Source: Fimbriosthenelais zetlandica (Eukaryota). From it: 64,000 nt of DNA. Positions within the stretch are counted from its first letter, which is position 1; each line of letters opens with the position of its first letter. The stretch spans positions 62,682,001 through 62,746,000 of the forward strand of contig OZ365109.1 of the NCBI GenBank assembly GCA_977030845.1. The letters are read 5' to 3'. Made by a program: the position numbers and the translations under genes. The notes under the pieces were generated by a model. That model saw nothing but the letters and a program-made list of their open reading frames with translations. It made no database searches and was not told the DNA's origin. Positions 13,896 to 30,758 of the stretch are shown in pieces.

Positions 13896-14557
13896 CCTTC
13901 CACATGCGGCGCAGAAAAGTAATGTACAACTACACCACTGTGATGGTCTGATATATTCATTGAATAGATAATTATTGCTTCGGGCATCTATAGGTGGATA
14001 CAGGCCTGATATGATATTTAATGATTGTGATTGTTTCAGGTATAAGCAATGGTGCAATGTCGTAATAATTTTGTCCAGTGAGTGTACAAGCCATGCATTG
14101 TCCCATATCGATGATCACAATGCAAAACCTCCTAACTGCAAAATGGTGTTTTCGAGAAAACAGAGCAAAACAACATTATTTTAAGAATGGATTTCAATTA
14201 GGGAACATTTCACAGGTCTATACCATAATTGTGTAACCTTCACTGGTTGGTTATATGCCACTGGCTATCCTGTCCCATGCCCACGAAAGCTAATATTGAA
14301 ATTAATGTAAAAGATACTTTAATTTAGTTATAGAGCCTCAACACGAAGATTAATATTATACATTTTTTTCTTGGGGCGCATGCATGCCAGTCAATGTATC
14401 AAATTTACAGCAAAATTGTACTCAATTTACGAGTTACTCGGCTGTTGTGGATCTTGCGACATCAAGATACAGCAGTTGCGGCTGGAAAAGCCAAAGAATC
14501 GCATGAAACAGTGTAGCTATACACTGCAAATCCACTGAACACCTAACGCGTTTAGAA

Positions 14558-14730
14558 TTGATTGAATGGGGTTTAACGTCACTTTTGAACAATTTTTCAG
14601 TTATATCATGACGGTGCCTACTTGTGACAGTGAGCCCAATGCTCTTTTATAGTGCTGCCTCACTGAGGTATCATGTCGCAGGCACATGACATGATATCTC
14701 CCCCAGTCACATTATACTGACACCGGGTTG
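14558..14730 (-). mobile_element. 5'-truncated SINE (MetaSINE-like core) inserted in the transposon left end
   Basis: Perfect 14-bp TSD TAACGCGTTTAGAA at 14544-14557 and 14731-14744. Minus strand reads TCAGTATAATGTGACTGG...TCAGTGAGGCAGCACTATAAAA...GACGTTAAACCCCATTCAATCAA (short-repeat tail). The family name is from recalled consensus, not a search. Confidence 0.8.
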
Positions 14731-15599
14731 TAACGCGTTTAGAAACGAAACAGGGGCATTTATAATTGAAGAAATGTGTTTTTAAACTAAACATTATGTT
14801 TAAATATAATGTTTAGGCGCCAGGGGTTTAGGTATATATCTCAAAGCAGAGAGGACCACGGGCCCACACAAAGATTGCTATAATATTAATGATTGATTTA
14901 AATATAACTTATCAACCACCATAATATTATACATCATGATCATATCATGGTATCAAATCGATATCCGATTCCCAAAATTTGAATGTTCCGGATATCAACT
15001 CTTGTCTCAGCTTTATACTCATTATATAATTTGAGTGGCTTGAATATAAACATGCCATTTATAACTCGGCCTCTTGCGCATGCGCCTTGATGACTTCCAG
15101 GAAGCTGACCACTTGACCACTTCATAGCCTACTACGATTCCAACAAGTAAGAACATTTTACTTAAAATTTCACATTTTCAGGCCTTCTAAGGCCACGAAT
15201 CTTAGAGAGAGGGGATAGCGATCTTGCGACTATGTCCATGGACCAGAGAAATACATAATGCTGTATGGAAAGGCATATAAAGGTCCCTGCTTATGATTGC
15301 ATGATCGCGACCCCCTCTCAAATTGAACAACATGTGAGGCCTTTTAAGGAAAATATACTACTTTTACCGGTATTATGTCGATTTAGACAAGTCTAGATTG
15401 GTGGTAGAAAACTCTGGTTGTGGTGGATTCATACATGGTAAATTAATAAGCTTGGTAATAATAACATAAATTGCCGGATCACTTAAAAACAACGTTCAGC
15501 TACATAAACACCATGCTTATCTTTGTAAACACCATGTTTAGCAGTTCCCTTTCGGCCATTCTCGTGACTTACACCATCAGTTACGAGCTATACATGCAT

Positions 15600-15832
15600 A
15601 CTGACATGTACATGTATGTCGGTATGCATGTCGGTATGTATGTTGGTATGCATGTCAGTATGTTAGTCGGTATGTTTGTCGGTATGTATGTTGGTATGCA
15701 TGTCAGTATGTTTGTCGGTATGTTTGTCGGTATGTATGTTGGTATGCATGTCAGTATGTTTGTCGGTATGTTTGTCGGTATGTATGTTGGTATGTATATC
15801 AGTATGTCGGTATGCATGCCGTCATACTGACA
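15600..15832. repeat. Compound 12-bp tandem array (GTYGGTATGYAT-type units, 36-bp higher-order period) upstream of the transposase
   Basis: Read directly; bracketed by inverted CATACTGAC units at ~15597 and ~15823; produces the spurious low-complexity ORFs at 15471-15897. Confidence 0.95.
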
Positions 15833-15927
15833 TGCATGCCTTCATACCGACAGACAGAGAGACATCTGATGATTATTTAGGTAAAGTAATCTCGTAGATT
15901 ATTCATTGATTCTTCTATTTTAGAAAA

Positions 15928-17891
15928 ATGGACGGCTTCAATTGCTCCATGTGTTGCTACAGCTCTTCTTTGTATAAACATTTCGTCGATCATGTGATAA
16001 GAATGCACCGACATGATCCTAATTTCATTGTTAACTGTAATGTGGTAAACTGCTCTTACTCCAGCAAGAGTTGGGGAGCATTTAAGGCCCATATGAGCCG
16101 AAAGCATGCAGATCCAATAATAGCTAATAATTATACTGACCATGGCATCTATGACGAGTCCAATACCATGGAATATATTGGACCTACACTTTCACAGCTA
16201 CATTTAGACCAGAAGAGAGTTGCGAATGCCACATTTTCTCTGGCACTGGAATCAGGCCATAACCTGGTCCAGTCATCGGTTGACGATGTCCTGGAGTCGA
16301 CCTCTTATCTTATTGAACAGCATGTGACACTTCTTAAGGAAAAGGTGCGGGCCAAATTAGAGGAACGTGGGATGGATGCAGACTTCTTGGAGGAAATTCC
16401 AGTGGAGCATCTACTGGATGAACTTGGATCCCACAAGAAGCGCACCAAAGTGTATGAAGAACTGGGATACATTGACCCATCTCCCGTAAAAGTAGGAAGC
16501 AGATTTGTAACAGTGAAAGGCAAATTGATCCAAAAGGATCTATTTTCCTATACAGTGCTTTTCAAGGAAAGCCTTGCCCGTATGTTAGAAATGCCCGAGG
16601 TGTGGACATATGTAAACAATGTTCATACAAGCACAAATGAATACACGATGTCTGTGATGGTTCATATATACAGTCACATCCCATGTTCATGAGAAATGCC
16701 AAGGCACTGCAAATCTTTCTTAACATGGATGACATGGAAATAGTGAATCCGATAGGGTCACACACCAAAAAACACAAGCTTTCCATGTTCTATTATACTT
16801 TGGGAAACATACCTCCTGAATGTCGCTCACGTTTGCAAGCTATTCAGCTTTTAGCAGTAGGACGAACCAAGGATCTGAGGGCATGTGGACCAGGTGTGCT
16901 ACTGCAGGATTTCATAAGAGCTATAAATGAAATGTCCACGGGGGGCGTTCTTCTGAAACTGAACGGCCATAATGTGAATATCGAAGGAACACTGATCATG
17001 GTTCCATGTGACACACTGGCTTCCCAATGGATTGGTGGGTTTAAGGAAGCTGTTGGCTTTGTGTATAGAGGATGCAGAAATTGCACAGCAACGCAAACAC
17101 AAAGGAAAGAACTATTTTGGGAGAAAGACTTTACTTTGAGAATGGAGGACGTACATCGCGAACACTGTGACGATTTGGAATCTGGTTTATCCAAGACAGC
17201 AAGGCAATATTGGAGCAAACATTGGGGTATCAACAAGAAAAGTTGTCTGCAAAGCATTCCTGATTTTCAAATCTGTTCTGGGCTTGTGCAGGACCCAATG
17301 CACATACTCTTGGAGGGTGTCATTCCTCATGTGTTAAAATACATGCTGTATGACTTCATCTTTGTTTCAAAATACTTTAAATTGCAGTGGCTGAACAACA
17401 GGATTGCTTCATTTCCATACACCTACTTGGAAATACGTAGCAAACCCGAACCTTTGCAGGGACATCAGCTCAATGGCGAAGGTCGTTTGAAGCAAACCTC
17501 TGCAGCAACATTAACCCTCACTTTTGTATTGCCTTACATTGTCTCTGAGAAGATATCACATGGAGAGGCAAAGTGGGTAAACTTTTTGAGGCTTGTGCAG
17601 ATAACATTGCTTGTCACCAGTCCCTATTGTTCGCGGACCACTGCCCCTCTTTTAGCACAGCTCATCTTTGATCATCACACTGCCTTCGTAAATCTTTATC
17701 CTTGTTTGCGGGTATGTATGTCGGTATGTATGTTGGTATGCATGTCAGTATGTTTGTCGGTATGTATGTTGGTATGTATGTCGGTATGTATATCAGTATG
17801 TCGGTATGCATGCCGTCATACTGACATGCATGCCTTCATACCGACAGACAGAGAGACATCTGATGATTATTTAGGTAAAGTAATCTCGTAG
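15928..17891 (+). pseudogene. EnSpm/CACTA transposase copy 1, frameshifted (~16641) and 3'-truncated
   Basis: ORFs 15928-16692 and 16683-17891. Two C2H2 fingers (CSMC..HVIRMH, CNVVNC..HMSRKH), LNMDDMEIVNPIG, VPCDTLAS, GCRNC and QDPMHILLEG motifs; ends in array-encoded sequence. Confidence 0.9.
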
Positions 17892-17921
17892 ATTATTCAT
17901 TGATTCTTCTATTTTAGAAAA

Positions 17922-20802
17922 ATGGACGGCTTCAATTGCTCCATGTGTTGCTACAGCTCTTCTTTGTATAAACATTTCGTCGATCATGTGATAAGAATGC
18001 ACCGACATGATCCTAATTTCATTGTTAACTGTAATGTGGTAAACTGCTCTTACTCCAGCAAGAGTTGGGGAGCATTTAAAGTGTAACTCGTGGGGCTATA
18101 CATGACTATGCATAAACATGTTCCAAATAGTGTTTAAATAATGAAAAGTCGTTCCAAATATTTTTTTCGTAATTCGAAATTTGTATAAATCCTGCGTTTT
18201 TGGAGCTATTTTGACACCTGTCTGAAAACGGTTCGTTGAGACAGTAGGTGGCGTGGTCAGTAGCGCATGACGTCACAAATCTGCACCCCCACCCACACTG
18301 AGCCCGCTCTGAGCCTTGCTCTGAGGCTTCTATGTTTGTAAACACCCGAGCGCCGACGTGGGAGAGAGCATGCACCTTTCCACTGCGAGAGAACATGCAT
18401 TACATTTGGCGGCTCTATATAGCCTATGGGAAAGTCAGCAAAGTGCAGTTGATTTGTGGGGGCGGGGGTAAAGTGTAGGCAATATATTTTTTTAGTACTT
18501 CAGTTAATAACGCCTATTAGTATTATAGGCCTCACTTAGCCGTGTTCCCGGCGTCTTCTGCCCGGTACACCCCTTCACCTCCTGGTCACTGTTCCCCACT
18601 ATCATGCACACGATTTGACAGGGGACGTTTTTAGTTAATTAGTCCTAACTGGATTAAAAAAGTAAAGGACAGTCTCATCTATAAATTGTTTGGAACAATA
18701 TAGTTATACCCTATACCCTATACCACTGGCTTTCTCGGAACTGCCCTATTTGTACAGTAGGAATCATCAGAAGCCATTTTCTCTCAACGAGCAATGCAGA
18801 TTTGTGACGTCACACTCCCCTGGCTCTACAGCGCTTTTAAATCCGGCGGTTTCAGTGGGAACTACATATTTTACACTTTCTAGGGTAAATAACTCATAAA
18901 CAAATTAGTGATTAAACGATGCCTTAACATTTTATGATACCTTTACTCAACATGAATTGTCAAAAGTCAAAAAATGCTATTTTAAAATAGCCATTAGTTG
19001 CCCTTTAAGGCCCATATGAGCCGAAAGCATGCAGATCCAATAATAGCTAATAATTATACTGACCATGGCATCAATGACGAGTCCAATACCATGGAATATA
19101 TTGGACCTACACCTTCACAGCTACATTTAGACCAGAAGAGAGTTGCGAATGCCACATTTTCTCTGGCACTGGAATCAGGCCATAACCTGGTCCAGTCATC
19201 GGTTGACGATGTCCTGGAGTCGACCTCTTATCTTATTGAACAGCATGTGACACTTCTTAAGGAAAAGGTGCGGGCCAAATTAGAGGAACGTGGGATGGAT
19301 GCAGACTTCTTGGAGGAAATTCCAGTGGAGCATCTACTGGATGAACTTGGATCCCACAAGAAGCGCACCAAAGTGTATGAAGAACTGGGATACATTGACC
19401 CATCTCCCGTAAAAGTAGGAAGCAGATTTGTAACAGTGAAAGGCAAATTGATCCAAAAGGATCTATTTTCCTATACAGTGCCTTTCAAGGAAAGCCTTGC
19501 CCGTATGTTAGAAATGCCCGAGGTGTGGACATATGTAAACAATGTTCATACAAGCACAAATGAATACACGATGTCTGTGATGGTTCATATATACAGTCAC
19601 ATCCCATGTTCATGAGAAATGCCAAGGCACTGCAAATCTTTCTTAACATGGATGACATGGAAATAGTGAATCCGATAGGGTCACACACCAAAAAACACAA
19701 GCTTTCCATGTTCTATTATACTTTGGGAAACATACCTCCTGAATGTCGCTCACGTTTGCAAGCTATTCAGCTTTTAGCAGTAGGACGAACCAAGGATCTG
19801 AGGGCATGTGGACCAGGTGTGCTACTGCAGGATTTCATAAGAGCTATAAATGAAATGTCCACGGGGGGCGTTCTTCTGAAACTGAACGGCCATAATGTGA
19901 ATATCGAAGGAACACTGATCATGGTTCCATGTGACACACTGGCTTCCCAATGGATTGGTGGGTTTAAGGAAGCTGTTGGCTTTGTGTATAGAGGATGCAG
20001 AAATTGCACAGCAACGCAAACACAAAGGAAAGAACTATTTTGGGAGAAAGACTTTACTTTGAGAATGGAGGACGTACATCGCGAACACTGTGACGATTTG
20101 GAATCTGGTTTATCCAAGACAGCAAGGCAATATTGGAGCAAACATTGGGGTATCAACAAGAAAAGTTGTCTGCAAAGCATTCCTGATTTTCAAATCTGTT
20201 CTGGGCTTGTGCAGGACCCAATGCACATACTCTTGGAGGGTGTCATTCCTCATGTGTTAAAATACATGCTGTATGACTTCATCTTTGTTTCAAAATACTT
20301 TAAATTGCAGTGGCTGAACAACAGGATTGCTTCATTTCCATACACCTACTTGGAAATACGTAGCAAACCCGAACCTTTGCAGGGACATCAGCTCAATGGC
20401 GAAGGTCGTTTGAAGCAAACCTCTGCAGCAACATTAACCCTCACTTTTGTATTGCCTTACATTGTCTCTGAGAAGATATCACATGGAGAGGCAAAGTGGG
20501 TAAACTTTTTGAGGCTTGTGCAGATAACATTGCTTGTCACCAGTCCCTATTGTTCGCGGACCACTGCCCCTCTTTTAGCACAGCTCATCTATGATCATCA
20601 CACTGCCTTCGTAAATCTTTATCCTTGTTTGCGGGTATGTATGTCGGTATGTATGTTGGTATGCATGTCAGTATGTTTGTCGGTATGTATGTTGGTATGT
20701 ATATCAGTATGTCGGTATGCATGCCGTCATACTGACATGCATGCCTTCATACCGACAGACAGAGAGACATCTGATGATTATTTAGGTAAAGTAATCTCGT
20801 AG
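17922..20802 (+). pseudogene. Transposase copy 2, interrupted by a 925-bp insertion, frameshifted and truncated
   Basis: ATG 17922 to TTAA 18076-79, resumes at 19005; ORF 19606-20802 matches copy 1. Confidence 0.9.
18080..19004. mobile_element. Non-autonomous TTAA-site DNA transposon, Kolobok-like (925 bp)
   Basis: TTAA TSD at 18076-79 and 19005-08; the empty site GCATTTAAGGCC is seen in the other three copies. Termini AGTGTAACT / AGGGCAACT (reverse complement). Perfect internal 18-bp inverted repeat at 18268-18285 and 18795-18812. AG termini fit Kolobok rather than piggyBac (CCY). Confidence 0.75.
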
Positions 20803-20832
20803 ATTATTCATTGATTCTTCTATTTTAGAAAA

Positions 20833-22796
20833 ATGGACGGCTTCAATTGCTCCATGTGTTGCTACAGCTCTTCTTTGTATAAACATTTCGTCGATCATGT
20901 GATAAGAATGCACCGACATGATCCTAATTTCATTGTTAACTGTAATGTGGTAAACTGCTCTTACTCCAGCAAGAGTTGGGGAGCATTTAAGGCCCATATG
21001 AGCCGAAAGCATGCAGATCCAATAATAGCTAATAATTATACTGACCATGGCATCAATGACGAGTCCAATACCATGGAATATATTGGACCTACACCTTCAC
21101 AGCTACATTTAGACCAGAAGAGAGTTGCGAATGCCACATTTTCTCTGGCACTGGAATCAGGCCATAACCTGGTCCAGTCATCGGTTGACGATGTCCTGGA
21201 GTCGACCTCTTATCTTATTGAACAGCATGTGACACTTCTTAAGGAAAAGGTGCGGGCCAAATTAGAGGAACGTGGGATGGATGCAGACTTCTTGGAGGAA
21301 ATTCCAGTGGAGCATCTACTGGATGAACTTGGATCCCACAAGAAGCGCACCAAAGTGTATGAAGAACTGGGATACATTGACCCATCTCCCGTAAAAGTAG
21401 GAAGCAGATTTGTAACAGTGAAAGGCAAATTGATCCAAAAGGATCTATTTTCCTATACAGTGCCTTTCAAGGAAAGCCTTGCCCGTATGTTAGAAATGCC
21501 CGAGGTGTGGACATATGTAAACAATGTTCATACAAGCACAAATGAATACACGATGTCTGTGATGGTTCATATATACAGTCACATCCCATGTTCATGAGAA
21601 ATGCCAAGGCACTGCAAATCTTTCTTAACATGGATGACATGGAAATAGTGAATCCGATAGGGTCACACACCAAAAAACACAAGCTTTCCATGTTCTATTA
21701 TACTTTGGGAAACATACCTCCTGAATGTCGCTCACGTTTGCAAGCTATTCAGCTTTTAGCAGTAGGACGAACCAAGGATCTGAGGGCATGTGGACCAGGT
21801 GTGCTACTGCAGGATTTCATAAGAGCTATAAATGAAATGTCCACGGGGGGCGTTCTTCTGAAACTGAACGGCCATAATGTGAATATCGAAGGAACACTGA
21901 TCATGGTTCCATGTGACACACTGGCTTCCCAATGGATTGGTGGGTTTAAGGAAGCTGTTGGCTTTGTGTATAGAGGATGCAGAAATTGCACAGCAACGCA
22001 AACACAAAGGAAAGAACTATTTTGGGAGAAAGACTTTACTTTGAGAATGGAGGACGTACATCGCGAACACTGTGACGATTTGGAATCTGGTTTATCCAAG
22101 ACAGCAAGGCAATATTGGAGCAAACATTGGGGTATCAACAAGAAAAGTTGTCTGCAAAGCATTCCTGATTTTCAAATCTGTTCTGGGCTTGTGCAGGACC
22201 CAATGCACATACTCTTGGAGGGTGTCATTCCTCATGTGTTAAAATACATGCTGTATGACTTCATCTTTGTTTCAAAATACTTTAAATTGCAGTGGCTGAA
22301 CAACAGGATTGCTTCATTTCCATACACCTACTTGGAAATACGTAGCAAACCCGAACCTTTGCAGGGACATCAGCTCAATGGCGAAGGTCGTTTGAAGCAA
22401 ACCTCTGCAGCAACATTAACCCTCACTTTTGTATTGCCTTACATTGTCTCTGAGAAGATATCACATGGAGAGGCAAAGTGGGTAAACTTTTTGAGGCTTG
22501 TGCAGATAACATTGCTTGTCACCAGTCCCTATTGTTCGCGGACCACTGCCCCTCTTTTAGCACAGCTCATCTTTGATCATCACACTGCCTTCGTAAATCT
22601 TTATCCTTGTTTGCGGGTATGTATGTCGGTATGTATGTTGGTATGCATGTCAGTATGTTTGTCGGTATGTATGTTGGTATGTATGTCGGTATGTATATCA
22701 GTATGTCGGTATGCATGCCGTCATACTGACATGCATGCCTTCATACCGACAGACAGAGAGACATCTGATGATTATTTAGGTAAAGTAATCTCGTAG
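20833..22796 (+). pseudogene. Transposase copy 3, frameshifted and truncated
   Basis: ORFs 20833-21597 and 21588-22796, near-identical to copy 1. Confidence 0.9.
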
Positions 22797-22826
22797 ATTA
22801 TTCATTGATTCTTCTATTTTAGAAAA

Positions 22827-25270
22827 ATGGACGGCTTCAATTGCTCCATGTGTTGCTACAGCTCTTCTTTGTATAAACATTTCGTCGATCATGTGATAAG
22901 AATGCACCGACATGATCCTAATTTCATTGTTAACTGTAATGTGGTAAACTGCTCTTACTCCAGCAAGAGTTGGGGAGCATTTAAGGCCCATATGAGCCGA
23001 AAGCATGCAGATCCAATAATAGCTAATAATTATACTGACCATGGCATCAATGACGAGTCCAATACCATGGAATATATTGGACCTACACCTTCACAGCTAC
23101 ATTTAGACCAGAAGAGAGTTGCGAATGCCACATTTTCTCTGGCACTGGAATCAGGCCATAACCTGGTCCAGTCATCGGTTGACGATGTCCTGGAGTCGAC
23201 CTCTTATCTTATTGAACAGCATGTGACACTTCTTAAGGAAAAGGTGCGGGCCAAATTAGAGGAACGTGGGATGGATGCAGACTTCTTGGAGGAAATTCCA
23301 GTGGAGCATCTACTGGATGAACTTGGATCCCACAAGAAGCGCACCAAAGTGTATGAAGAACTGGGATACATTGACCCATCTCCCGTAAAAGTAGGAAGCA
23401 GATTTGTAACAGTGAAAGGCAAATTGATCCAAAAGGATCTATTTTCCTATACAGTGCCTTTCAAGGAAAGCCTTGCCCGTATGTTAGAAATGCCCGAGGT
23501 GTGGACATATGTAAACAATGTTCATACAAGCACAAATGAATACACGATGTCTGTGATGGTTCATATATACAGTCACATCCCATGTTCATGAGAAATGCCA
23601 AGGCACTGCAAATCTTTCTTAACATGGATGACATGGAAATAGTGAATCCGATAGGGTCACACACCAAAAAACACAAGCTTTCCATGTTCTATTATACTTT
23701 GGGAAACATACCTCCTGAATGTCGCTCACGTTTGCAAGCTATTCAGCTTTTAGCAGTAGGACGAACCAAGGATCTGAGGGCATGTGGACCAGGTGTGCTA
23801 CTGCAGGATTTCATAAGAGCTATAAATGAAATGTCCACGGGGGGCGTTCTTCTGAAACTGAACGGCCATAATGTGAATATCGAAGGAACACTGATCATGG
23901 TTCCATGTGACACACTGGCTTCCCAATGGATTGGTGGGTTTAAGGAAGCTGTTGGCTTTGTGTATAGAGGATGCAGAAATTGCACAGCAACGCAAACACA
24001 AAGGAAAGAACTATTTTGGGAGAAAGACTTTACTTTGAGAATGGAGGACGTACATCGCGAACACTGTGACGATTTGGAATCTGGTTTATCCAAGACAGCA
24101 AGGCAATATTGGAGCAAACATTGGGGTATCAACAAGAAAAGTTGTCTGCAAAGCATTCCTGATTTTCAAATCTGTTCTGGGCTTGTGCAGGACCCAATGC
24201 ACATACTCGTGGAGGGTGTCATTCCTCATGTGTTAAAATACATGCTGTATGACTTCATCTTTGTTTCAAAATACTTTAAATTGCAGTGGCTGAACAACAG
24301 GATTGCTTCATTTCCATACACCTACTTGGAAATACGTAGCAAACCCGAACCTTTGCAGGGACATCAGCTCAATGGCGAAGGTCGTTTGAAGCAAACCTCT
24401 GCAGCAACATTAACCCTCACTTTTGTATTGCCTTACATTGTCTCTGAGAAGATATCACATGGAGAGGCAAAGTGGGTAAACTTTTTGAGGCTTGTGCAGA
24501 TAACATTGCTTGTCACTAGTCCCTATTGTTCGCGGACCACTGCCCCTCTTTTAGCACAGCTCATCTATGATCATCACACTGCCTTCGTAAATCTTTATCC
24601 CTTGGGAACAGTCATCCCAAAAATGCACTACTGCGTGGATCTGCCACGTCAGATGTTACAGTATGGTCCACTGAGACATCATTGGTGCATGAGGTATGAA
24701 GGGAAGCATGGATTCTTCAAAGGGAAGAAATGGAGAAATTTCAAAAATCTCCCCTTGAGTATAAGCAGGAAACACCAGAAATACATGTGTTATAAACAGT
24801 TGGGTTGTGGAGGTGAGAGGTCTAGCTCATTTCTCTATGAAGGTGATATAATCCGTGAGGGACAGACAGTTGACTTCTTAGACATATATCCAGAATTAGC
24901 TGACAATATGTTTGCCCAAACTGGCGAGGTCTGCAATGGTCTGGAAGTCTACCAGACACCAGGTGTCACCATTCTTGGACATGAGTACAGACCAGGATGC
25001 TGCCTAGTTGTGGGGTACCAGGAAGATCTCCCACAGTTTGGCTTATTGTGTGACATTTTTGTTTTCAAAGATACAAAATACTTCGTGATTGAATACATGG
25101 ACATTGACTATTTCGAAAGACATTGTATAAGCTACGTGTTGCAAGCAACAAATACTCGCGCAGTACTTCCGCATTCTAAGCTCTTCTCAAAATGGCCTTT
25201 GAGTGTATATGTCCACCACAACCAGAAAACAGTTATCAATAGATATTCTCATACTTGTGAACAATTCTGA
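22827..25270 (+). pseudogene. Transposase copy 4: full-length EnSpm/CACTA DDE transposase (~810 aa if the frameshift at ~23540 is corrected)
   Basis: ORFs 22827-23591 and 23582-25270. All motifs of copy 1 plus PKMHYCVDLP, YGPLRHHWCMRYEGKHGFFK (likely catalytic E, codon 24698-24700) and a natural C-terminus. Confidence 0.9.
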
Positions 25271-25333
25271 AATATTAGGTACTTTATAATGGGTTACTAA
25301 TCCCCAGAATTCCCCACAAACCAGAAGTCAGGA

Positions 25334-25366
25334 GGGGTGGGGGTAGGGGTGGAGTGGGGTGCGGGG
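25334..25366 (+). other. Potential G-quadruplex between the two transposon genes
   Basis: Five runs of at least 4 G with 1-6-nt loops. Confidence 0.6.
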
Positions 25367-25748
25367 TGGAAGTTTAAAAGGTAAATGCATTCTAATGTAT
25401 AACTTGTCACCCAATACCCATCCAAGGAAGGCAGGCATCAGCATTATTTAACCTCTTACATACACACACAGCATGTGGTGAGGGGTTGTGCCCCACAAGC
25501 TGACACCCAACCATCTCACACACACTTTCGTAATCAGTCGTAACTAAGGGAGGGTTAAAATAGTAACTAAGAGAGGGCTAAAAATTGCCAAAATTATGCT
25601 GGGGAATGTGCTAAAGTATACTATTAAATTGGGCATTTTTGAATTGAAATGAACAACTCAAAAGCTGTGATGGTAGACTGGCAGAGCATAATTGTTCCAC
25701 TGAATTATGTCACTAAAAATGTATTTATCCTTTTAAAAGGTCAACATC

Positions 25749-28726
25749 ATGCCAGTATACAAATTGTGGACATGGGATAGGGGAAGCAAAAAGTCTGTAG
25801 TTGCTCAGACATGTGCAGAGGTCATCGAGAAAGGTAATGAATGTTTTCACATCGTTATAGACACGTATATCCTATAGAATTGACGAAATGATGTATTAGC
25901 TACATAATTATACGGTTGCACATAAAACTTATATCAGACAGAATGATATGTCCTCTATATGTTGGTCCACCAAATGATCCATTTTTCCACAGTAACATGT
26001 TTAACTGGAGTTTTCACATTCTAATGATACTTTTCAATAGTGGCAAGATCTAACTATTCATTTGGCTTACAGGGAAGGTCAAGCATGGATTCGACTGTCC
26101 TCCTTCATCTCTACGTCTTGTTATTGAGGAAGACGGCACCGAAATAGATGACGACGAAGTTCTGACCGAATTGAAAGGGAGTATTTTAATGATTCTCCAG
26201 GAAGGGCAGTGCTGGCAAGAGAGATCTTCCATACCCGAACCTGATTTGGAAGTTGTGGATTCCCCACGGCCCTCAACCTCCACTGACTGCAACAATGCTC
26301 CAACCTATGACCCTCCAGCTGGAGGGAGAATAACTATTTCTACACCTCTTCCCCAGTTGAGTATACGAATTCAACAAAACTTGGAACTCAACACGGAATA
26401 TAAAGTCTGGAGGGAGCTGGTTTCTGAAACTGCCTACCATTACCTCCGAATCAACCCGAATATAGATAACAGTGGAGTACCGCGCAATAGGGCAGGCCAT
26501 GTTGGATCGTTATCCAAGCATGGCGAGGGATGGAGAACATCCTTGGGTAAATATGACAGTTATCATTATTATTATTATTAGTCATTATTATTATCCCCCG
26601 GGTCAACTTAGTGTAATATAAACTTTGACCATGATTTCCATGTAGACCTATCAAACGCTGTTGCACTTTTTGTACTGACTCATGTAGTAGAATTCCTCCT
26701 GCTTTAAATTATCTACTCCGATGATCAGATCTGATGATTAGGGTCCATTGTACGTGTGTCCTCACATATAGTATATTCGAGGTGGACCTCAACATCTTTT
26801 TACAATCATGTCCGAGCATTTTCCTATTTGGTATTTTGCAGAGTTTCTTCATAAAATGCCTTAGCCAGTGTATTCGCCATTTACGGTGGATCAACAAAAA
26901 AAGAACCCAGCCACATCTTAATTCAGCTGATGGTACAAGGAAGAGATCTGGAGACAAAATCCCAGCCAGCACACCAGCAAAGACTGCAAGAGGGGCATCA
27001 CTGCCATCAATGCCATCCCAGGATAGGGTAAATGTACTTTTCATGCACCATGTGAATATTAAGACATTCAATCTGTAAGTTGGGTCGTACATAACACTGT
27101 ATTTCATCCAAAGTCTGATCATGTTAATTTATGCATATATATAATATAATATATATAACGAACCACAGGGAATCATCAATGATGAAGAGTATGATGGCCA
27201 TATCGAGCAGCTCCAGCGCCAGTGGGATAAACCAGAACAGTCACGAAACTTAAGTCATATCAAAGTGTTACTCGCGGAGACATTTACAAGAAATCAGGCG
27301 TGGATAAAGACCCTTCCCGACTCAACCGTTGCGCCAATATTACAAAGGATTCCATGCTACCAAGATGGAGACATGGTGAGTATAATTGTATATTTGTTGG
27401 CAATCTTGTTCGACTAGCCACTTTAAGCAGGGTGTCAACAAAAGAACTGCAATAATTATAAAAATCGGATAGTTTTTTACAGAAACATTAAATTACGGAA
27501 AGCTTTCAAAGTTGTGCTCAGTGTTTGCAGTTTTGGTGGGGGAAAGGCCAACAATGCATGCTCAAAAGGGAATATTGATTGATAAATTCCTGAACTTACA
27601 TAATGCATGGAGCTATATTTTAATGTTTTTATCAGCCTTTCATTTTTGGAATATAAATATGTTCTGCTTTGGTCATTAACAAAGTCAGATTTAGGGGAGT
27701 GGCTAATCATTTCAGATATGTCATGACTTCAAACTAATGATCTGTAAGGAAATGTACAGTGCGTTGGCACAAAAAATAGAGACATTATTGTGTGCAGTGG
27801 AGGCCATCATGGGGTCCAAAACAGAGGTATTGCAGGGTTTATTGCACGCCTATTTATTGTAATGATATTATTTTAAGAATGTAACAGGCCCCTGATATAT
27901 AACAAATTCCACCACTGCATGGTTCCAGGATGATTTCAGGATTCCTGGATGAACGGACAGACCGAGGAACCCATCATCAGAGCCAGCATATGCTTACAAA
28001 TTTGATATATTTATATAAATTGATTGTTTTGTTCATCATTTCCATTATAGTTTTAAGTGTTTTGTACTTGTTCTTCGTGTTAAATTCTTCGTCTTCATAT
28101 TCTATATTAATACACTGATATTTAAGTTTACCAGTTGAACTAAAATATCGAATATTAACAAGTTGTTTAACATTATACCAACGTTTGGTAGGTCAAACAT
28201 CAGGTCACTGCCAGTGTTCTCAAATGATTTCTCCGTCCTTTCGGAAACTTAGAATTACACGTCTTCTTTTATTACAATTTTCTTCTTTGATTTCTCTTTC
28301 TGGAATTTAATTCAATTTGTCCTGCGATATGTGTATATACAATATTTGTCTGTCCTTTCTGAAAATTTGAATTGTCTTCTTTGATTATCTTATCCTGTAT
28401 ATATGTGTATATCGAGCTGTTTTTTTGTTTGAAGCTGTCACTTTGACAAATAATGTCCTCTATCAATCACTATGCTCATTAACATAAGAAATGCTGATGG
28501 CATAACAATAGACACACAGACAACTAGTGTTGCGGCTGCAACACTAGGCCTGTTAGCCTCATATTTCGTCTTCAATTTGGAATTTCCAAGGATATATTCA
28601 CAACTGTTGGGGACATTACAAAGTGCTTTTCTACCCATGTCGCAGTACGACGGCCCTAAAAGTTCTAAGTATACTCATTTTCAATCATTATTAAAACGCC
28701 AGGTATCAAAGACATTCAAAGAGTAG
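25749..28726 (+). pseudogene. Spliced transposon accessory gene (ORF2, ~470 aa reconstructed) with an N-terminal CIDE-N-like domain; disrupted
   Basis: GT-AG exons 25749-25833, 26073-26546, 26842-27027, 27169-27375, 27716-27858 and 27929-(insertion)-28726, joined in compatible phases. Translation MPVYKLWTWDRGSKKSVVAQTCAEVIEK/GKVKHGFDCPPSSLRLVIEEDGTEIDDDEVLTELKGSILMILQEGQCWQ...; C-terminus ...AAATLGLLASYFVFNLEFPRIYSQLLGTLQ. One +1 frameshift at ~26474 and a 482-bp insertion. The last two junctions are less certain. Confidence 0.75.
27995..28476. other. 482-bp AT-rich segment interrupting the last ORF2 exon
   Basis: Bounded by direct TATGCT at 27989-94 and 28471-76; removing it fuses ORF 27930 and ORF 28472 in frame. 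Confidence 0.45.
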
Positions 28727-28744
28727 ATTACAGGTATACAGTCG

Positions 28745-29315
28745 GTTTTTATTTATGTTTTTTATTTTATATTTGAAAGCCTCCTATTTGTCAATTTCTT
28801 GGGGTTTAAGTCGTTCCATAAAAAGCTTCCTATATAGCGGGGATTCCCTTTGAAAGATTCAAGTTTAGGTTTAGTCGTTAAAAAATTGGTATGATCATGT
28901 GACCTGGTGGCGAGTTCTCTTTTATCAACCCAGGCTGTTCTGTTCTGTTTAGAATACATGATATTAAGAATGCGTGCTTTTCTTCTTTTTTTTCAACAGC
29001 GGGATATTACACCTTGTGTGTAGGTCATTGGTTGCTAAAGTATGGTCATTGTATGCAAGTCTATCCTTGCAACATTGTATGCAAGTCTATCATTGGTAAA
29101 CAGTTATTTTGAAGGGTTTGTAGCTTTTTGAATTTTATATTGGACCCCCCATTGTATATGATGTCCCCATAATCTAGGTGGCTCATAATAGGTGATTTAT
29201 AAATAATCACTGCTGCTTTTTCAGTAAGATACGGTCTGATTTTGGCTAGCATTAATATTTTGTAGCTTAGTTTTTGTATTAATAGGTCAATGTTCTTGGT
29301 AAAGGAGAGAGTCAT
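28745..29315 (-). mobile_element. 5'-truncated CR1/L2-type LINE 3' fragment (post-RT region), antisense inside the transposon
   Basis: TLSFTKNIDLLIQKLSYKILMLAKIRPYL..IYKSPIMSHLDYGDIIY..KLQTLQN and ATRS..PKLESFKGNPRYIGSFLWNDL resemble the C-terminal part of CR1/L2-clade ORF2; A-rich tail near 28745-28770. Confidence 0.8.
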
Positions 29316-29364
29316 ATATTATAATTATCTGGTTTATGTTTCGCGATAAGCATTTTAATCCAAG

Positions 29365-29681
29365 TTTATGTAACTTGCTACACACCAGTGTTTATAATAT
29401 AAATTATAAACACTGTCAGGTGTTTACTAACTGTTACTAGTAATAAACATGTAAAAACGTTTATAAACTAAACATGTCTTGATGTTTATTATTTAAACAA
29501 GGTGTTTTCTTCTAAACATGTCGGTATTTACTGCATAAATATCTACTGCGTTTATCTCGCTAAACATTGGTGTTAATATTTACACAAGGTGTTTACATGT
29601 AAACGTGTTAAAGTGTTTACTACCCGTTACAGATATGTGTTTATATTAGTGTTCAAAACCTAAACACTTGGACTTACAGTG
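29365..29681. repeat. Right subterminal repeat region and right TIR of the CACTA element
   Basis: About a dozen TAAACA/TGTTTA motifs in both orientations, ending in TGGACTTACAGTG. Confidence 0.8.
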
Positions 29682-30758
29682 TACTCCATAATGGGGCTGT
29701 TGCGGCATGCAATTGAGGCAGAAAATTGCGGATATTTCAACAGCGAAATCACAAGGTTCCAAAGAAATAAAATCTAATTGAACTACTCCATTAGAGCAAC
29801 CCGTTGAAAGCTGCCAGAATACAAAGCCATCAGACAAAGGGGTGGATTTAGAGTTATAAATAGTTAAGTTAAATTCAAGTCCTGCTCTATAGAGCGTCAT
29901 CTTCTCCTTGAGTCTTTAGAACAAGACTGGAACATTACAGGCGTAACTAATGAATGCGATATCTGAATGAGAAGAAATGATTTAAGGATGCTGGGCATCA
30001 CAACTTCTGTCTTAATTACCTGTCTTCCAGACACAGTTAGGATTAAGTGTTGCATATATATTACATTCCTCGCCATAATTAAAACAACAGGAGTCCGTCC
30101 ATTAGCATGCAACAAACTCAGCTAAATTAAATTTCTTTTCGGTTTCAACCTCACTCCTGTACAAACAGTTGATACCCATGAGTAACGGGAACCTTTTTAA
30201 TGCCCAGCCGACGCCTTTAAATTCTCCATATCAAATCCACTGACACATCAGGCGGGCAACAGTTTTTTCGGCGTATTTTGAGCATTATTGTTAAATGAAA
30301 AAAGAAACTTGCATCGGATTCTGCTGGGATGAAAAAAAAACTGTTTTAATTGAAAAATATTATATTTTGTATTTTCCCAGGAAGAACACCTGAGTAGGTG
30401 CACCGTGAATGAACATTATTGAGGAACCTTATGGCCATTTTGCGTGCTTCGAGGATATAAAGTAGACCACCCATAATTGAGACCAAATCAACACTACACT
30501 GTAACGCCCACTACATGCTCTAGCAGTCTCATGTCCTGCGCGTTCCCGGCAGCAGGGGTAAATAACTCTCCGATTATGATACATTGTATCCCAGTGCGGT
30601 ACTCTGAGCGCGCGAAACGCGCCGGACCTTTTGCACCGTGCGGCTGTCGATGCGACGCATCAATATGCAGGTGCTAAGCATTGTATAGCCAGGAGTATAC
30701 ACTGAGTGATGGCTGCGTCGCGCTGTGTAACTGCGGCTCCAACCAGAAGCTTGTGCAT

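What the first reader, a model, noticed from the sequence alone, without database searches (positions are those of the whole stretch)
14522..29681. Complete two-gene animal CACTA/EnSpm element with definable ends, swollen to 15 kb
Seen: 11/13 TIR match starting CACTG, TA on both sides, subterminal repeats and two co-oriented genes. Subtracting three extra transposase units and the nested inserts leaves a parental element of roughly 7 kb. Established: CACTA elements have short CAC-initiated TIRs, 2-3-bp TSDs and subterminal repeats. Inference: this single copy records a whole life history of amplification, nesting and decay, and the parent can be reconstructed from it.
Basis: partly seen in the sequence, partly recalled or inferred. 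Interest (0 to 1): 0.7.

Follow-up and report, generated by a model that had tools for sequence, protein, structure and literature searches.

The report
Decayed two-gene CACTA-type jumping gene
This 15-kb stretch is a genuine but no longer functional cut-and-paste jumping gene of the CACTA/EnSpm kind, swollen by an internal four-fold repeat and later insertions, whose second gene (carrying a cell-death-type CIDE-N domain) travels with the transposase in starfish and limpet genomes too.

Summary
The termini at 14522 and 29681 (CACTG..., 11/13 inverted match) and the TA on each side are there. They would not exceed chance on their own, but other copies in the genome prove them. A 6.7-kb sister copy carries both ends, and so do 19 of 19 examined 1.76-kb non-autonomous copies. 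All stop at these bases; 18 of the 19 non-autonomous copies have a 2-bp direct flank repeat (TA or CA).

The transposase has no Pfam hit, but a family profile reaches true Transposase_21 proteins (hhalign 98.9%). It carries the CMC signature D-D-C(2)C-H(3)H-E, and its model matches RAG1/Transib.

Four ~1,994-bp tandem units (three extra, 99.7-99.95% identical) are real in the assembly. A TTAA-flanked 925-bp element and a SINE-like 172-bp repeat are nested inside.

Corrections:
- 26225-27770 is ancestral gene-2 sequence that the sister copies have lost, not an insert.
- The un-swollen length is about 8.1 kb, not 7 kb.
- Both genes are broken. The transposase has a frameshift in all four units and a changed invariant histidine. 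Gene 2 has a frameshift.

The transposase followed by a CIDE-N gene recurs in Acanthaster and Lottia. I found no description of this in the papers I could search. The scan also noted a related two-gene CACTA-type element elsewhere in this genome (s1-188369).

The parts
14520..14521 (.). Left copy of the 2-bp target-site duplication (TA)
   Evidence: Among 19 non-autonomous copies the 2-bp flanks are TA/TA in 13, CA/CA in 5 and CA/TA in 1.
14522..14534 (+). Left terminal inverted repeat, CACTGCAAATCCA
   Evidence: Sister alignments begin here. The first 16 bp are identical in 19 of 19 non-autonomous copies.
14522..15100 (.). Left subterminal region with 7 GTTTA/TAAAC motifs in both orientations (SINE-like insert left out of the count)
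   Evidence: 18 per kb against 2.6 per kb in the window.
14559..14730 (.). Nested SINE-like 172-bp repeat, flanked by a 14-bp duplication (14545-14558 and 14731-14744)
   Evidence: Absent from sister copies L001 and L002. About 1,980 candidate copies in the genome, the scored ones 98-99% identical. No tRNA-like part.
15612..15852 (+). 12-bp minisatellite (ATGTATGTCGGT, about 16 copies) plus a 20-bp repeat, upstream of the transposase start. One breakpoint of the tandem duplication lies in it.
15708..17701 (+). Tandem unit 1 (1,994 bp): minisatellite, leader and the first two thirds of the transposase (ORFs 15928-16692 and 16683-17891)
17702..20624 (+). Tandem unit 2 (2,923 bp = 1,994 + 929), interrupted by the TTAA element
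18080..19004 (.). Nested 925-bp non-autonomous element flanked by TTAA (18076-18079 and 19005-19008), piggyBac-like target. It lies only in unit 2, so it arrived after the amplification.
   Evidence: at least 155 candidate copies, the best 99% identical, with alignments running through TTAA on both sides.
20625..22606 (+). Tandem unit 3 (1,982 bp; one minisatellite repeat fewer)
22607..24600 (+). Tandem unit 4 (1,994 bp), which continues into the only complete transposase 3' part
22827..25270 (+). Transposase gene, about 816 codons in two overlapping ORFs (22827-23591 and 23582-25270). The frameshift lies at 23519-23540. The N-terminus has paired C2H2 fingers. The core is a DDE domain with C(2)C and H(3)H. 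The codon at 24638-24640 reads D where relatives have the second H.
25749..28726 (+). Gene 2 (accessory gene). Exon 1 is 25749-25834 (first half of CIDE-N). The intron is 25835-26072 (GT..AG). Exon 2 starts at 26073 (second half of CIDE-N) and has a frameshift near 26475. Further conserved coding blocks lie at 26725-27075, 27145-27414 and 27737-27834. The conserved C-terminal domain is at 28454-28723.
   Evidence: The same gene order occurs in Acanthaster and Lottia.
26225..27770 (+). Gene-2 segment (1,546 bp) kept only in this copy. Sister copies L001 and L002 share its loss; one base stands in its place, a net 1,545 bp, which keeps the frame.
   Evidence: No other copy in the genome. It carries blocks 35-49% identical in protein to the Acanthaster gene. 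Junction read.
29092..29313 (-). 222-bp multi-copy repeat fragment inside the right part, also present in L001 and L003, so older than these copies
   Evidence: No Pfam hit for its 84-aa ORF.
29320..29681 (.). Right subterminal region with 19 GTTTA/TAAAC motifs in both orientations
   Evidence: 52 per kb against 2.6 per kb.
29669..29681 (-). Right terminal inverted repeat (reverse complement CACTGTAAGTCCA)
   Evidence: Sister and non-autonomous alignments end here or within the TA.
29682..29683 (.). Right copy of the 2-bp target-site duplication (TA)

Best explanation
Window 14522-29681 is one insertion of an autonomous-type cut-and-paste DNA transposon of the CMC (CACTA/EnSpm-Mirage-Chapaev) superfamily. 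It is now coding-dead.

How such an element works:
- Shown: the family has CACTG... termini, short imperfect TIRs, arrays of a TGTTTA-type motif under both ends, a 2-bp duplication of a YA target, and an ~820-aa transposase.
- Shown: the transposase has N-terminal paired C2H2 fingers and a DDE core carrying the C(2)C and H(3)H zinc motifs. Its modelled fold is closest to RAG1 and Transib.
- Inferred: the fingers, and/or the product of gene 2, bind the subterminal motifs and pair the ends. The core nicks at the CAC termini, probably with a hairpin on the flanking DNA as in RAG1/Transib. It then inserts the freed 3'-OH ends with a 2-bp stagger.
- Gene 2 (CIDE-N domain plus a conserved ~110-aa C-terminal domain) is a lineage-conserved accessory gene. 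I take it to be a functional analogue of maize TnpA; this is inference.

History of this copy, as shown by the order of nested features:
1. Insertion at a TA.
2. A frameshift in the transposase.
3. A microhomology-type tandem duplication joining mid-transposase (...CTTTATCC) to the upstream 12-bp minisatellite.
4. Expansion to four units, presumably by unequal exchange, since all three junctions are identical.
5. Insertion of a TTAA element into unit 2.

A young SINE-like repeat also entered the left end. It is absent from the sister copies and 98-99% identical to its relatives, but its place in this order is not fixed.

The same termini flank several hundred 1.76-kb non-autonomous elements, which this or a close transposase presumably moved.
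For: Ends and TSD.
- Sister L001 is 6,724 bp and carries both ends.
- 19 of 19 non-autonomous copies share identical 16-bp termini, and 18 of 19 have a direct 2-bp repeat, TA or CA.

Superfamily:
- A profile of the family finds P0149 and P0150 at E 2.9e-23 and 6.5e-19. Both pass Pfam's cut-off for Transposase_21.
- hhalign of the family profile against P0150 gives 98.85% probability, E 4e-17, over 415 columns.
- Own-genome paralogues at E 1e-45 to 1e-30 have Transposase_21 as their best, sub-threshold hit. P0120, a homologue from the protein search, has DUF4218 and Plavaka as its sub-threshold hits.
- D276, D370, C391, C394, H608, H612 and E632 are invariant across 74 sequences.

Fold: model pLDDT 92, pTM 0.91. 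All 48 significant PDB matches are RAG1, RAG1-like or Transib.

Subterminal repeats.

Tandem units: (1-6 differences per 1,855 bp; identical junctions).

Nested inserts.

Gene 2 and its conservation.

Lesions.
Against: - The window transposase itself has no Pfam hit even at E 10, so the link to Transposase_21 is transitive, through profiles.
- The 2-bp TSD and CACTG differ from the plant prototype (3 bp, CACTA).
- Sister L001 has CA on the left and TG on the right, not a direct repeat.
- The non-autonomous copies are 10-26% diverged from this element inside the termini, so their mobiliser may be a different, unseen relative.
- No RNA or read data could be obtained. Transcription, the gene-2 exon model and the four-unit array therefore rest on the assembly alone.
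- The biochemical steps are inferred from RAG1/Transib and En/Spm, not shown.
Confidence: 0.9

Rival explanations
1. The element belongs to the Transib/RAG1-like lineage rather than to CACTA/EnSpm-type CMC elements.
For: The only significant solved-structure matches are RAG1, amphioxus RAG1-like and Helicoverpa Transib. The termini start CAC, as in Transib ends and RSS heptamers. The C(2)C and H(3-4)H motifs are shared by both groups (PMC12730594).
Against: No CACTA-type transposase structure appears among the matches, so RAG1/Transib is simply the nearest solved relative. Sequence profiles link the family to Transposase_21 and DUF4218 proteins. I recall the Transib TSD as 5 bp; here it is 2 bp.
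Confidence: 0.05
2. Within CMC it is a Mirage-type element (2-bp TSD) and not an EnSpm/CACTA-type one, so the label 'CACTA/EnSpm' is wrong at the subgroup level.
For: The TSD is 2 bp, which I recall as the Mirage value. The prototype CACTA TSD is 3 bp.
Against: Animal Transposase_21-bearing 'TRC' elements, filed under the CACTA superfamily, also make 2-bp duplications (PMC1636069). The profile links go to Transposase_21/DUF4218 proteins. No Mirage reference sequence was available to test.
Confidence: 0.2
3. The four-fold tandem array is an assembly artefact, an over-expanded repeat, and the real element has one unit.
For: The units are 99.7-99.95% identical and both sister copies have one unit. 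No reads could be laid.
Against: The units differ at six fixed sites. Unit 3 has one minisatellite repeat fewer, and only unit 2 carries a 925-bp TTAA element with its own target duplication. Distinct units of this kind are not what a simple mis-assembly gives.
Confidence: 0.08
4. Gene 2 is a host gene fragment captured by this element lineage (transduplication), with no role in transposition.
For: The host genome has two cellular CIDE-N loci split by an intron at about the same domain position. A gene-2 homologue in Lingula has no transposase within 10 kb upstream. Another homologue is fused to a RING/B-box protein in a fish.
Against: The transposase-then-CIDE-N order is kept in an echinoderm and a mollusc besides this genome, with transposases only 42-61% identical to this one. 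A passenger with no function would not be expected to stay linked that long. A weakly similar C-terminal domain lies downstream of three paralogous transposases in this genome.
Confidence: 0.2

Closest known systems
Animal CACTA-superfamily 'TRC' elements such as SmTRC1 of Schistosoma mansoni (PMC1636069)
   Same: Animal host, a transposase related to Pfam Transposase_21, 2-bp target duplication, several kb long, and more than one protein product including one without the transposase domain.
   Different: The TRC termini reported there start CCC, whereas here they start CACTG. SmTRC1's transposase hits Transposase_21 directly, while this one does so only through profiles. SmTRC1's accessory products showed no similarity to anything, whereas gene 2 here has a CIDE-N domain and is conserved across phyla.
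Maize En/Spm (the CACTA prototype)
   Same: CAC-initiated short TIRs, arrays of short subterminal motifs in both orientations, a DDE transposase of the Transposase_21/DUF4218 type, a second element-encoded protein, and many internally deleted derivatives.
   Different: En/Spm has a 3-bp TSD and CACTA termini, against 2 bp and CACTG here. In En/Spm, TnpA and TnpD come from one alternatively spliced unit (as summarised in PMC1636069). Here the two genes lie one after the other, and how they are expressed is untested. TnpA has no CIDE-N domain, to my knowledge.
Transib transposase and RAG1 (PDB 6pqx, 4wwx, 6dbv)
   Same: Closest solved fold (Foldseek E 5e-11 to 1e-5). [quoted passage not shown] Ends begin with CAC.
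   Different: Sequence identity is only 10-13%. The TSD is 2 bp, against the 5 bp I recall for Transib. There is no RAG2-like partner. The N-terminal DNA-binding part consists of C2H2 fingers.
Another two-gene CACTA/EnSpm-type element in this genome (scan note s1-188369)
   Same: Same genome, a CMC-type transposase plus a second gene. A weak match of the gene-2 C-terminal domain lies downstream of three paralogous transposases.
   Different: It is a different family; the own-genome paralogues I tested are 27-29% identical in the transposase. That accessory gene is described as SAMD3-like, not CIDE-N. I did not establish which paralogue that note refers to.

Membership tests
CMC / CMCT clade of DDE transposons (CACTA/EnSpm, Mirage, Chapaev; PMC12730594, PMC4079192) | Termini 5'-CA(C)...(G)TG-3' | tested here: met
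   CACTG... and ...CAGTG in the window, in L001 and in 19 of 19 non-autonomous copies.
CMC / CMCT clade of DDE transposons (CACTA/EnSpm, Mirage, Chapaev; PMC12730594, PMC4079192) | Short TSD (2 to 5 bp) | tested here: met
   A 2-bp direct repeat in 18 of 19 non-autonomous copies and in the window copy. L001 is an exception, with CA and TG.
CMC / CMCT clade of DDE transposons (CACTA/EnSpm, Mirage, Chapaev; PMC12730594, PMC4079192) | [quoted passage not shown] | tested here: met
   D276, D370, C391-x2-C394, H608-x3-H612 and E632 (Acanthaster numbering) are invariant in 74 sequences, including two true Transposase_21 proteins. The window copy itself has D at the second H.
CMC / CMCT clade of DDE transposons (CACTA/EnSpm, Mirage, Chapaev; PMC12730594, PMC4079192) | Transposase homologous to Pfam Transposase_21 (PF02992) and DUF4218 | tested here: met
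   Direct hmmscan of the window protein finds nothing. The family profile reaches PF02992 proteins at E 2.9e-23 and 6.5e-19, and hhalign gives 98.85% over 415 columns covering both domains.
Canonical CACTA/En-Spm as defined in plants | 3-bp TSD | tested here: not met
   The TSD is 2 bp.
Canonical CACTA/En-Spm as defined in plants | Terminal pentanucleotide CACTA | tested here: not met
   The termini read CACTG.
Canonical CACTA/En-Spm as defined in plants | Subterminal repeat arrays | tested here: met
   GTTTA/TAAAC motif enriched 7-fold on the left and 20-fold on the right, in both orientations.
Canonical CACTA/En-Spm as defined in plants | Two products (TnpA and TnpD) from one alternatively spliced transcription unit | not testable with these tools
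   No RNA run was listed. Two co-oriented genes are present.
Mirage subgroup of CMC | Transposase groups with Mirage references in a tree | not tested
   No Mirage, Chapaev or Repbase reference sequences were available. The 2-bp TSD is compatible with Mirage.
Transib / RAG1-like | 5-bp TSD (from my own knowledge) | tested here: not met
   The TSD is 2 bp. The fold similarity to RAG1/Transib is real but is shared by the wider clade.
piggyBac-type non-autonomous element (the insert in unit 2) | TTAA target duplication | tested here: met
   TTAA on both sides here, and genome-wide alignments run through it. The transposase source was not sought.

The most novel reading that the evidence does not exclude
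The CIDE-N gene is not a passenger. It would be an obligatory, anciently conserved partner of this RAG1-like transposase lineage across bilaterian phyla. Its conserved C-terminal domain would bind the element or the transposase. Its CIDE-N domain, the module through which the apoptotic nuclease DFF40 and its inhibitor DFF45 pair, would tie transposition to the host's DNA-fragmentation machinery, for instance by damping the response to the breaks that excision makes.
Probability: 0.12. Interest if true: 0.75.

Novelty: new variant of a known kind. Interest (0 to 1): 0.42.

Why it matters
Animal CACTA-type elements are known but poorly characterised. Their transposases often escape family models, as this one does, so such elements get annotated as 'uncharacterized' host genes. 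All named homologues found here carry such labels.

This locus, with its sister copies, gives a fully delimited reference for one such lineage: exact termini, a 2-bp YA target, subterminal motifs, a catalytic signature and hundreds of non-autonomous derivatives.

The more interesting point is the accessory gene. A CIDE-N protein with an uncharacterised, confidently folding C-terminal domain stays linked to the transposase in an echinoderm-like genome, a starfish and a limpet. That makes the question of what accessory proteins do for RAG1-like transposases testable in a new system.

The internal tandem amplification is a clean, datable example of how a transposon copy can swell without transposing.

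Tried and rejected
- Pfam on all long ORFs found no family at E up to 0.01, and none for the main transposase ORF even at E 10. This was overcome with profiles.
- The protein atlas look-up failed because the machine was busy.
- The paper by Yuan and Wessler (2011) that defines CMC is not held. I used the restatement in PMC12730594.
- I first took E470 (MHxxxEG) for the catalytic E. I dropped this when the alignment that includes true Transposase_21 proteins showed H608/H612 followed by the invariant E632.
- I first took 26225-27771 and 27835-28071 for nested inserts. Both were rejected. The first is unique in the genome and homologous to the Acanthaster gene. The second is present in L002, so it is a deletion in L001.
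- I considered that TA and CA...TG might be part of the TIR rather than a TSD. This was rejected because five copies have CA on both sides, which is a direct repeat, not an inverted one.
- The empty-site search in the assembly found no match.
- No sequencing runs were listed.
- Fold searches for the gene-2 C-terminal domain found nothing significant. The best were weak SH2-like matches at Z about 4.
- No CACTG-type terminus was found within 10 kb upstream of the Acanthaster transposase with a strict pattern.
- The 222-bp repeat at 29092-29313 looked to me like the tail of a non-LTR retrotransposon ORF, but Pfam gives no support.
- The SINE-like repeat has no tRNA-like part.
Full report
**1. 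The observation**

The left end reads CACTGCAAATCCA from 14522. The right end reads ...TGGACTTACAGTG up to 29681. In inverted orientation the two match at 11 of 13 positions, and TA lies directly outside each end.

This alone is weak evidence. The 64-kb window holds 85 CAC-initiated inverted pairs of 11/13 or better within 2-20 kb, seven of them with matching 2-bp flanks. Shuffled sequence gives 62-79 and 3-7. The case therefore has to rest on other copies.

**2. Other copies fix the ends**

I searched the window's own genome with 800-bp stretches across each end.
- Alignments stop at 14521/14522 and at 29682/29683.
- The 200 bp outside each end are single-copy.
- A sister copy on the same chromosome (L001) carries both ends 6,724 bp apart. 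A second (L002) has the left end, and a third locus (L003) is a solo right end.

Searching with the sister's left end, which lacks the nested SINE-like repeat, gave at least 338 candidate sites. I fetched twenty of them. Nineteen had both termini, mostly 1.66-1.76 kb apart, each with identical 16-bp ends. Their 2-bp flanks were TA/TA in 13, CA/CA in 5 and CA/TA in 1.

CA on both sides is a direct repeat, not an inverted one. So the dinucleotide is a true target-site duplication of a YA target, not an extension of the TIR.

L001 is odd, with CA on the left and TG on the right. I leave that unexplained; decay of a CG is possible.

Fifteen of the non-autonomous copies are on average 98.1% identical to each other. 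They are only 90% (first 176 bp) to 74-76% identical to the autonomous copies inside the termini.

**3. Subterminal repeats**

The motif GTTTA/TAAAC, the core of TGTTTA, occurs in both orientations. There are 19 copies in the last 362 bp and 7 in the first 392 bp. That is 52 and 18 per kb, against 2.6 per kb in the window.

**4. The transposase**

The longest reading frames are a 254-aa ORF (22827-23591) and a 562-aa ORF (23582-25270). Neither has a Pfam family, apart from weak C2H2 signals in the first.

A word-based search found 124 relatives. All were unnamed or 'uncharacterized'. The best is an 824-aa protein of Acanthaster planci at 61% identity, followed by proteins of sea urchin, crinoid, molluscs, a hemichordate, a nemertean and a soft coral. 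The window's host is therefore probably an echinoderm or a near relative; this is inference.

Against the single Acanthaster ORF, the window gene changes frame between 23519 and 23540.

In this genome only three copies of the family exist, and each is broken in its own way:
- L001 has a frameshift near residue 325 and a TGA.
- L002 has two insertions and a TAA.

More distant paralogues (27-29% identity, E 1e-45 to 1e-30) have open frames of 820-941 aa.

**5. Superfamily**

- Genome-wide, all eight sub-threshold hits of Pfam Transposase_21 lie at loci that the transposase query had also matched. The five that I translated have Transposase_21 as their best hit (E 4e-5 to 0.015). One distant homologue from the protein search, P0120, hits DUF4218 and Plavaka instead.
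- A 16-sequence profile (A1) retrieved two proteins at E 2.9e-23 and 6.5e-19. Both pass Pfam's own cut-off for Transposase_21, at 59.8 and 50.9 bits against 28.6.
- hhalign of A1 against one of them gives 98.85% probability, E 4e-17, over 415 columns spanning both the Transposase_21 and DUF4218 regions.
- In a 74-sequence alignment that includes those two, the invariant residues are D276, D370, C391, C394, H608, H612 and E632, in Acanthaster numbering. This is the D, D, C(2)C, H(3)H, E pattern that PMC12730594 gives as the mark of EnSpm, Mirage, Chapaev and Transib.
- The AlphaFold model is confident (pLDDT 92.2, pTM 0.91). All 48 significant PDB matches are RAG1, amphioxus RAG1-like or Helicoverpa Transib. 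That fits the same clade. No CACTA-type structure is among the matches.

The 2-bp TSD matches animal CACTA-superfamily 'TRC' elements (PMC1636069) and, from memory, Mirage. It does not match the 3-bp plant prototype. I therefore file the element in CMC, EnSpm/CACTA-like by its Pfam link, with the subgroup left open.

The window copy has D (GAT) where both sisters and all relatives have the second histidine of H(3)H.

**6. The swelling**

Four tandem units lie between 15708 and 24600. Their periods are 1,994, 2,923, 1,982 and 1,994 bp. Each holds part of a 12-bp minisatellite, the leader and the first two thirds of the transposase.

The three junctions are identical. The sequence ...GTAAATCTTTATCC is followed by TTGTTTGCGG and the minisatellite, where the intact gene continues CTTGGGAAC. 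This fits one microhomology-type duplication followed by unequal exchange; that is inference.

Outside the minisatellite the units differ at only 1-6 of 1,855 positions, whereas sister copies differ by 3-8%. All units carry the same frameshift, so it came first.

Two inserts are truly nested:
- Unit 2 alone holds a 925-bp element flanked by TTAA. It has at least 155 relatives, the best 99% identical.
- The left end holds a 172-bp SINE-like repeat with a 14-bp duplication. It is absent from the sisters and has about 1,980 candidate relatives, the scored ones 98-99% identical.

Taking out 6,899 bp (the extra units with their insert) and 187 bp (the repeat plus one TSD copy) leaves about 8,074 bp.

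**7. What is not an insert**

Against L001 and L002 the window has an extra 1,546 bp at 26225-27770, where the sisters have a single base. It has no other copy in the genome. It contains blocks 35-49% identical in protein to the gene downstream of the Acanthaster transposase.

The net change of 1,545 bp keeps the frame in the sisters. So the sisters share an internal deletion, and the window copy is the only one with the full gene 2.

The stretch 27835-28071 is missing only from L001.

**8. Gene 2**

Pfam CIDE-N matches in two pieces. Model positions 4-35 lie at 25758-25853 and positions 25-76 at 26066-26218. The exon junctions behind these are AAAG|GTAATG at 25834/25835 and TTACAG|G at 26072/26073.

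Relative to the Acanthaster gene there is a frameshift near 26475. Two in-frame stops near 27076-27144 may lie in an intron.

The same order, transposase then a co-oriented CIDE-N gene, is annotated in three other places:
- Acanthaster: an 824-aa transposase and a 648-aa product.
- Lottia gigantea: 781 aa and 409 aa.
- More faintly, one ENA contig.

In Lottia, candidate termini CACTGTAAACC with TA flanks enclose both genes.

The last exon encodes a ~110-aa domain with the motif LLxxYYVFNLxYP...Q.
- It has 320 representative clusters at E up to 0.001.
- Of ten longer relatives scanned, three carry an N-terminal CIDE-N above Pfam's cut-off and a fourth just below it.
- All named ones are 'uncharacterized', from molluscs, a brachiopod, a hemichordate and a fish.
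- It folds confidently (pLDDT 88.6) but matches no solved fold. The best are weak SH2-like hits at Z about 4.
- Weak matches to its core lie 2.7-3.9 kb downstream of three paralogous transposases in this genome, at E 4e-4, 4e-3 and 0.04 in a small search space. This may connect with scan note s1-188369, which describes a SAMD3-like accessory gene.
- A Lingula homologue has no transposase within 10 kb upstream.

I found no paper linking CIDE-N to a transposon gene. Repbase and Dfam could not be consulted.

**9. Verdict**

Three points need correction:
- The element is structurally complete but coding-dead.
- The un-swollen size is about 8.1 kb.
- The 6.7-kb sisters are deletion derivatives, so the parent cannot be read from this copy alone.

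It is a new family of a known kind. Its accessory gene, a CIDE-N protein conserved with the transposase across phyla, is the part worth following.

**Untested**
- The reads-based check of the array and of an empty allele.
- RNA evidence.
- Placement among EnSpm, Mirage and Chapaev.

Noticed in passing
G000:C1, e.g. L013 108-1868, L017, L020, L023 (19 copies in L012-L030): A family of about 1.76-kb non-autonomous elements has the same 16-bp termini and 2-bp YA duplications. There are at least 338 candidate left ends. Fifteen compared copies are about 98% identical to each other, which points to a fairly recent burst, although no intact transposase of this family is in the assembly.
   Followed up: partly
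G000:C38:704361-707060, C19:20861279-20864014, C25:21552124-21554946, C27:5924078-5926549, C13:36074551-36077010 (L005-L009): Five paralogous CMC-type transposase genes have uninterrupted ORFs of 820-941 aa (27-29% identical to this one). Each has Transposase_21 as its best, sub-threshold Pfam hit.
   Followed up: partly
G000:C19:3035298-3035674 and C38:9140551-9141009: Two cellular-looking CIDE-N loci are split by an intron at about the same domain position (model position about 36) as the transposon's gene 2. This is compatible with an old capture of a host exon pair or with a conserved intron.
   Followed up: no
window 18080-19004: A 925-bp TTAA-flanked element with imperfect 14-bp TIRs (AGTGTAACT.../AGGGCAACT...) has at least 155 copies in two age classes (97-99% and about 92% identical). 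The autonomous partner was not sought.
   Followed up: partly
window 14559-14730: A 172-bp SINE-like repeat has about 1,980 candidate copies, the scored ones 98-99% identical, so it is very young. It has a 14-bp TSD here, and no tRNA-like part or poly-A tail was seen.
   Followed up: partly
window 29092-29313 (minus strand ORF 29061-29315): A 222-bp multi-copy repeat fragment is carried inside the right part of the element and shared with L001 and L003. Its ORF reminded me of the C-terminal tail of non-LTR retrotransposon ORF2, but Pfam finds nothing.
   Followed up: partly
L001 flanks (G000:C1:34817438 and 34824161): The sister copy has CA outside its left end and TG outside its right end, instead of a direct 2-bp repeat. 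L001 and L002 are 100% identical over their left 500 bp, although each differs from the window copy by several percent.
   Followed up: no
P0185 (Synaphobranchus kaupii, 1,265 aa): The gene-2 C-terminal domain sits at the end of a RING plus B-box (TRIM-like) protein in a fish. This could be a domestication or a chimeric gene model.
   Followed up: no
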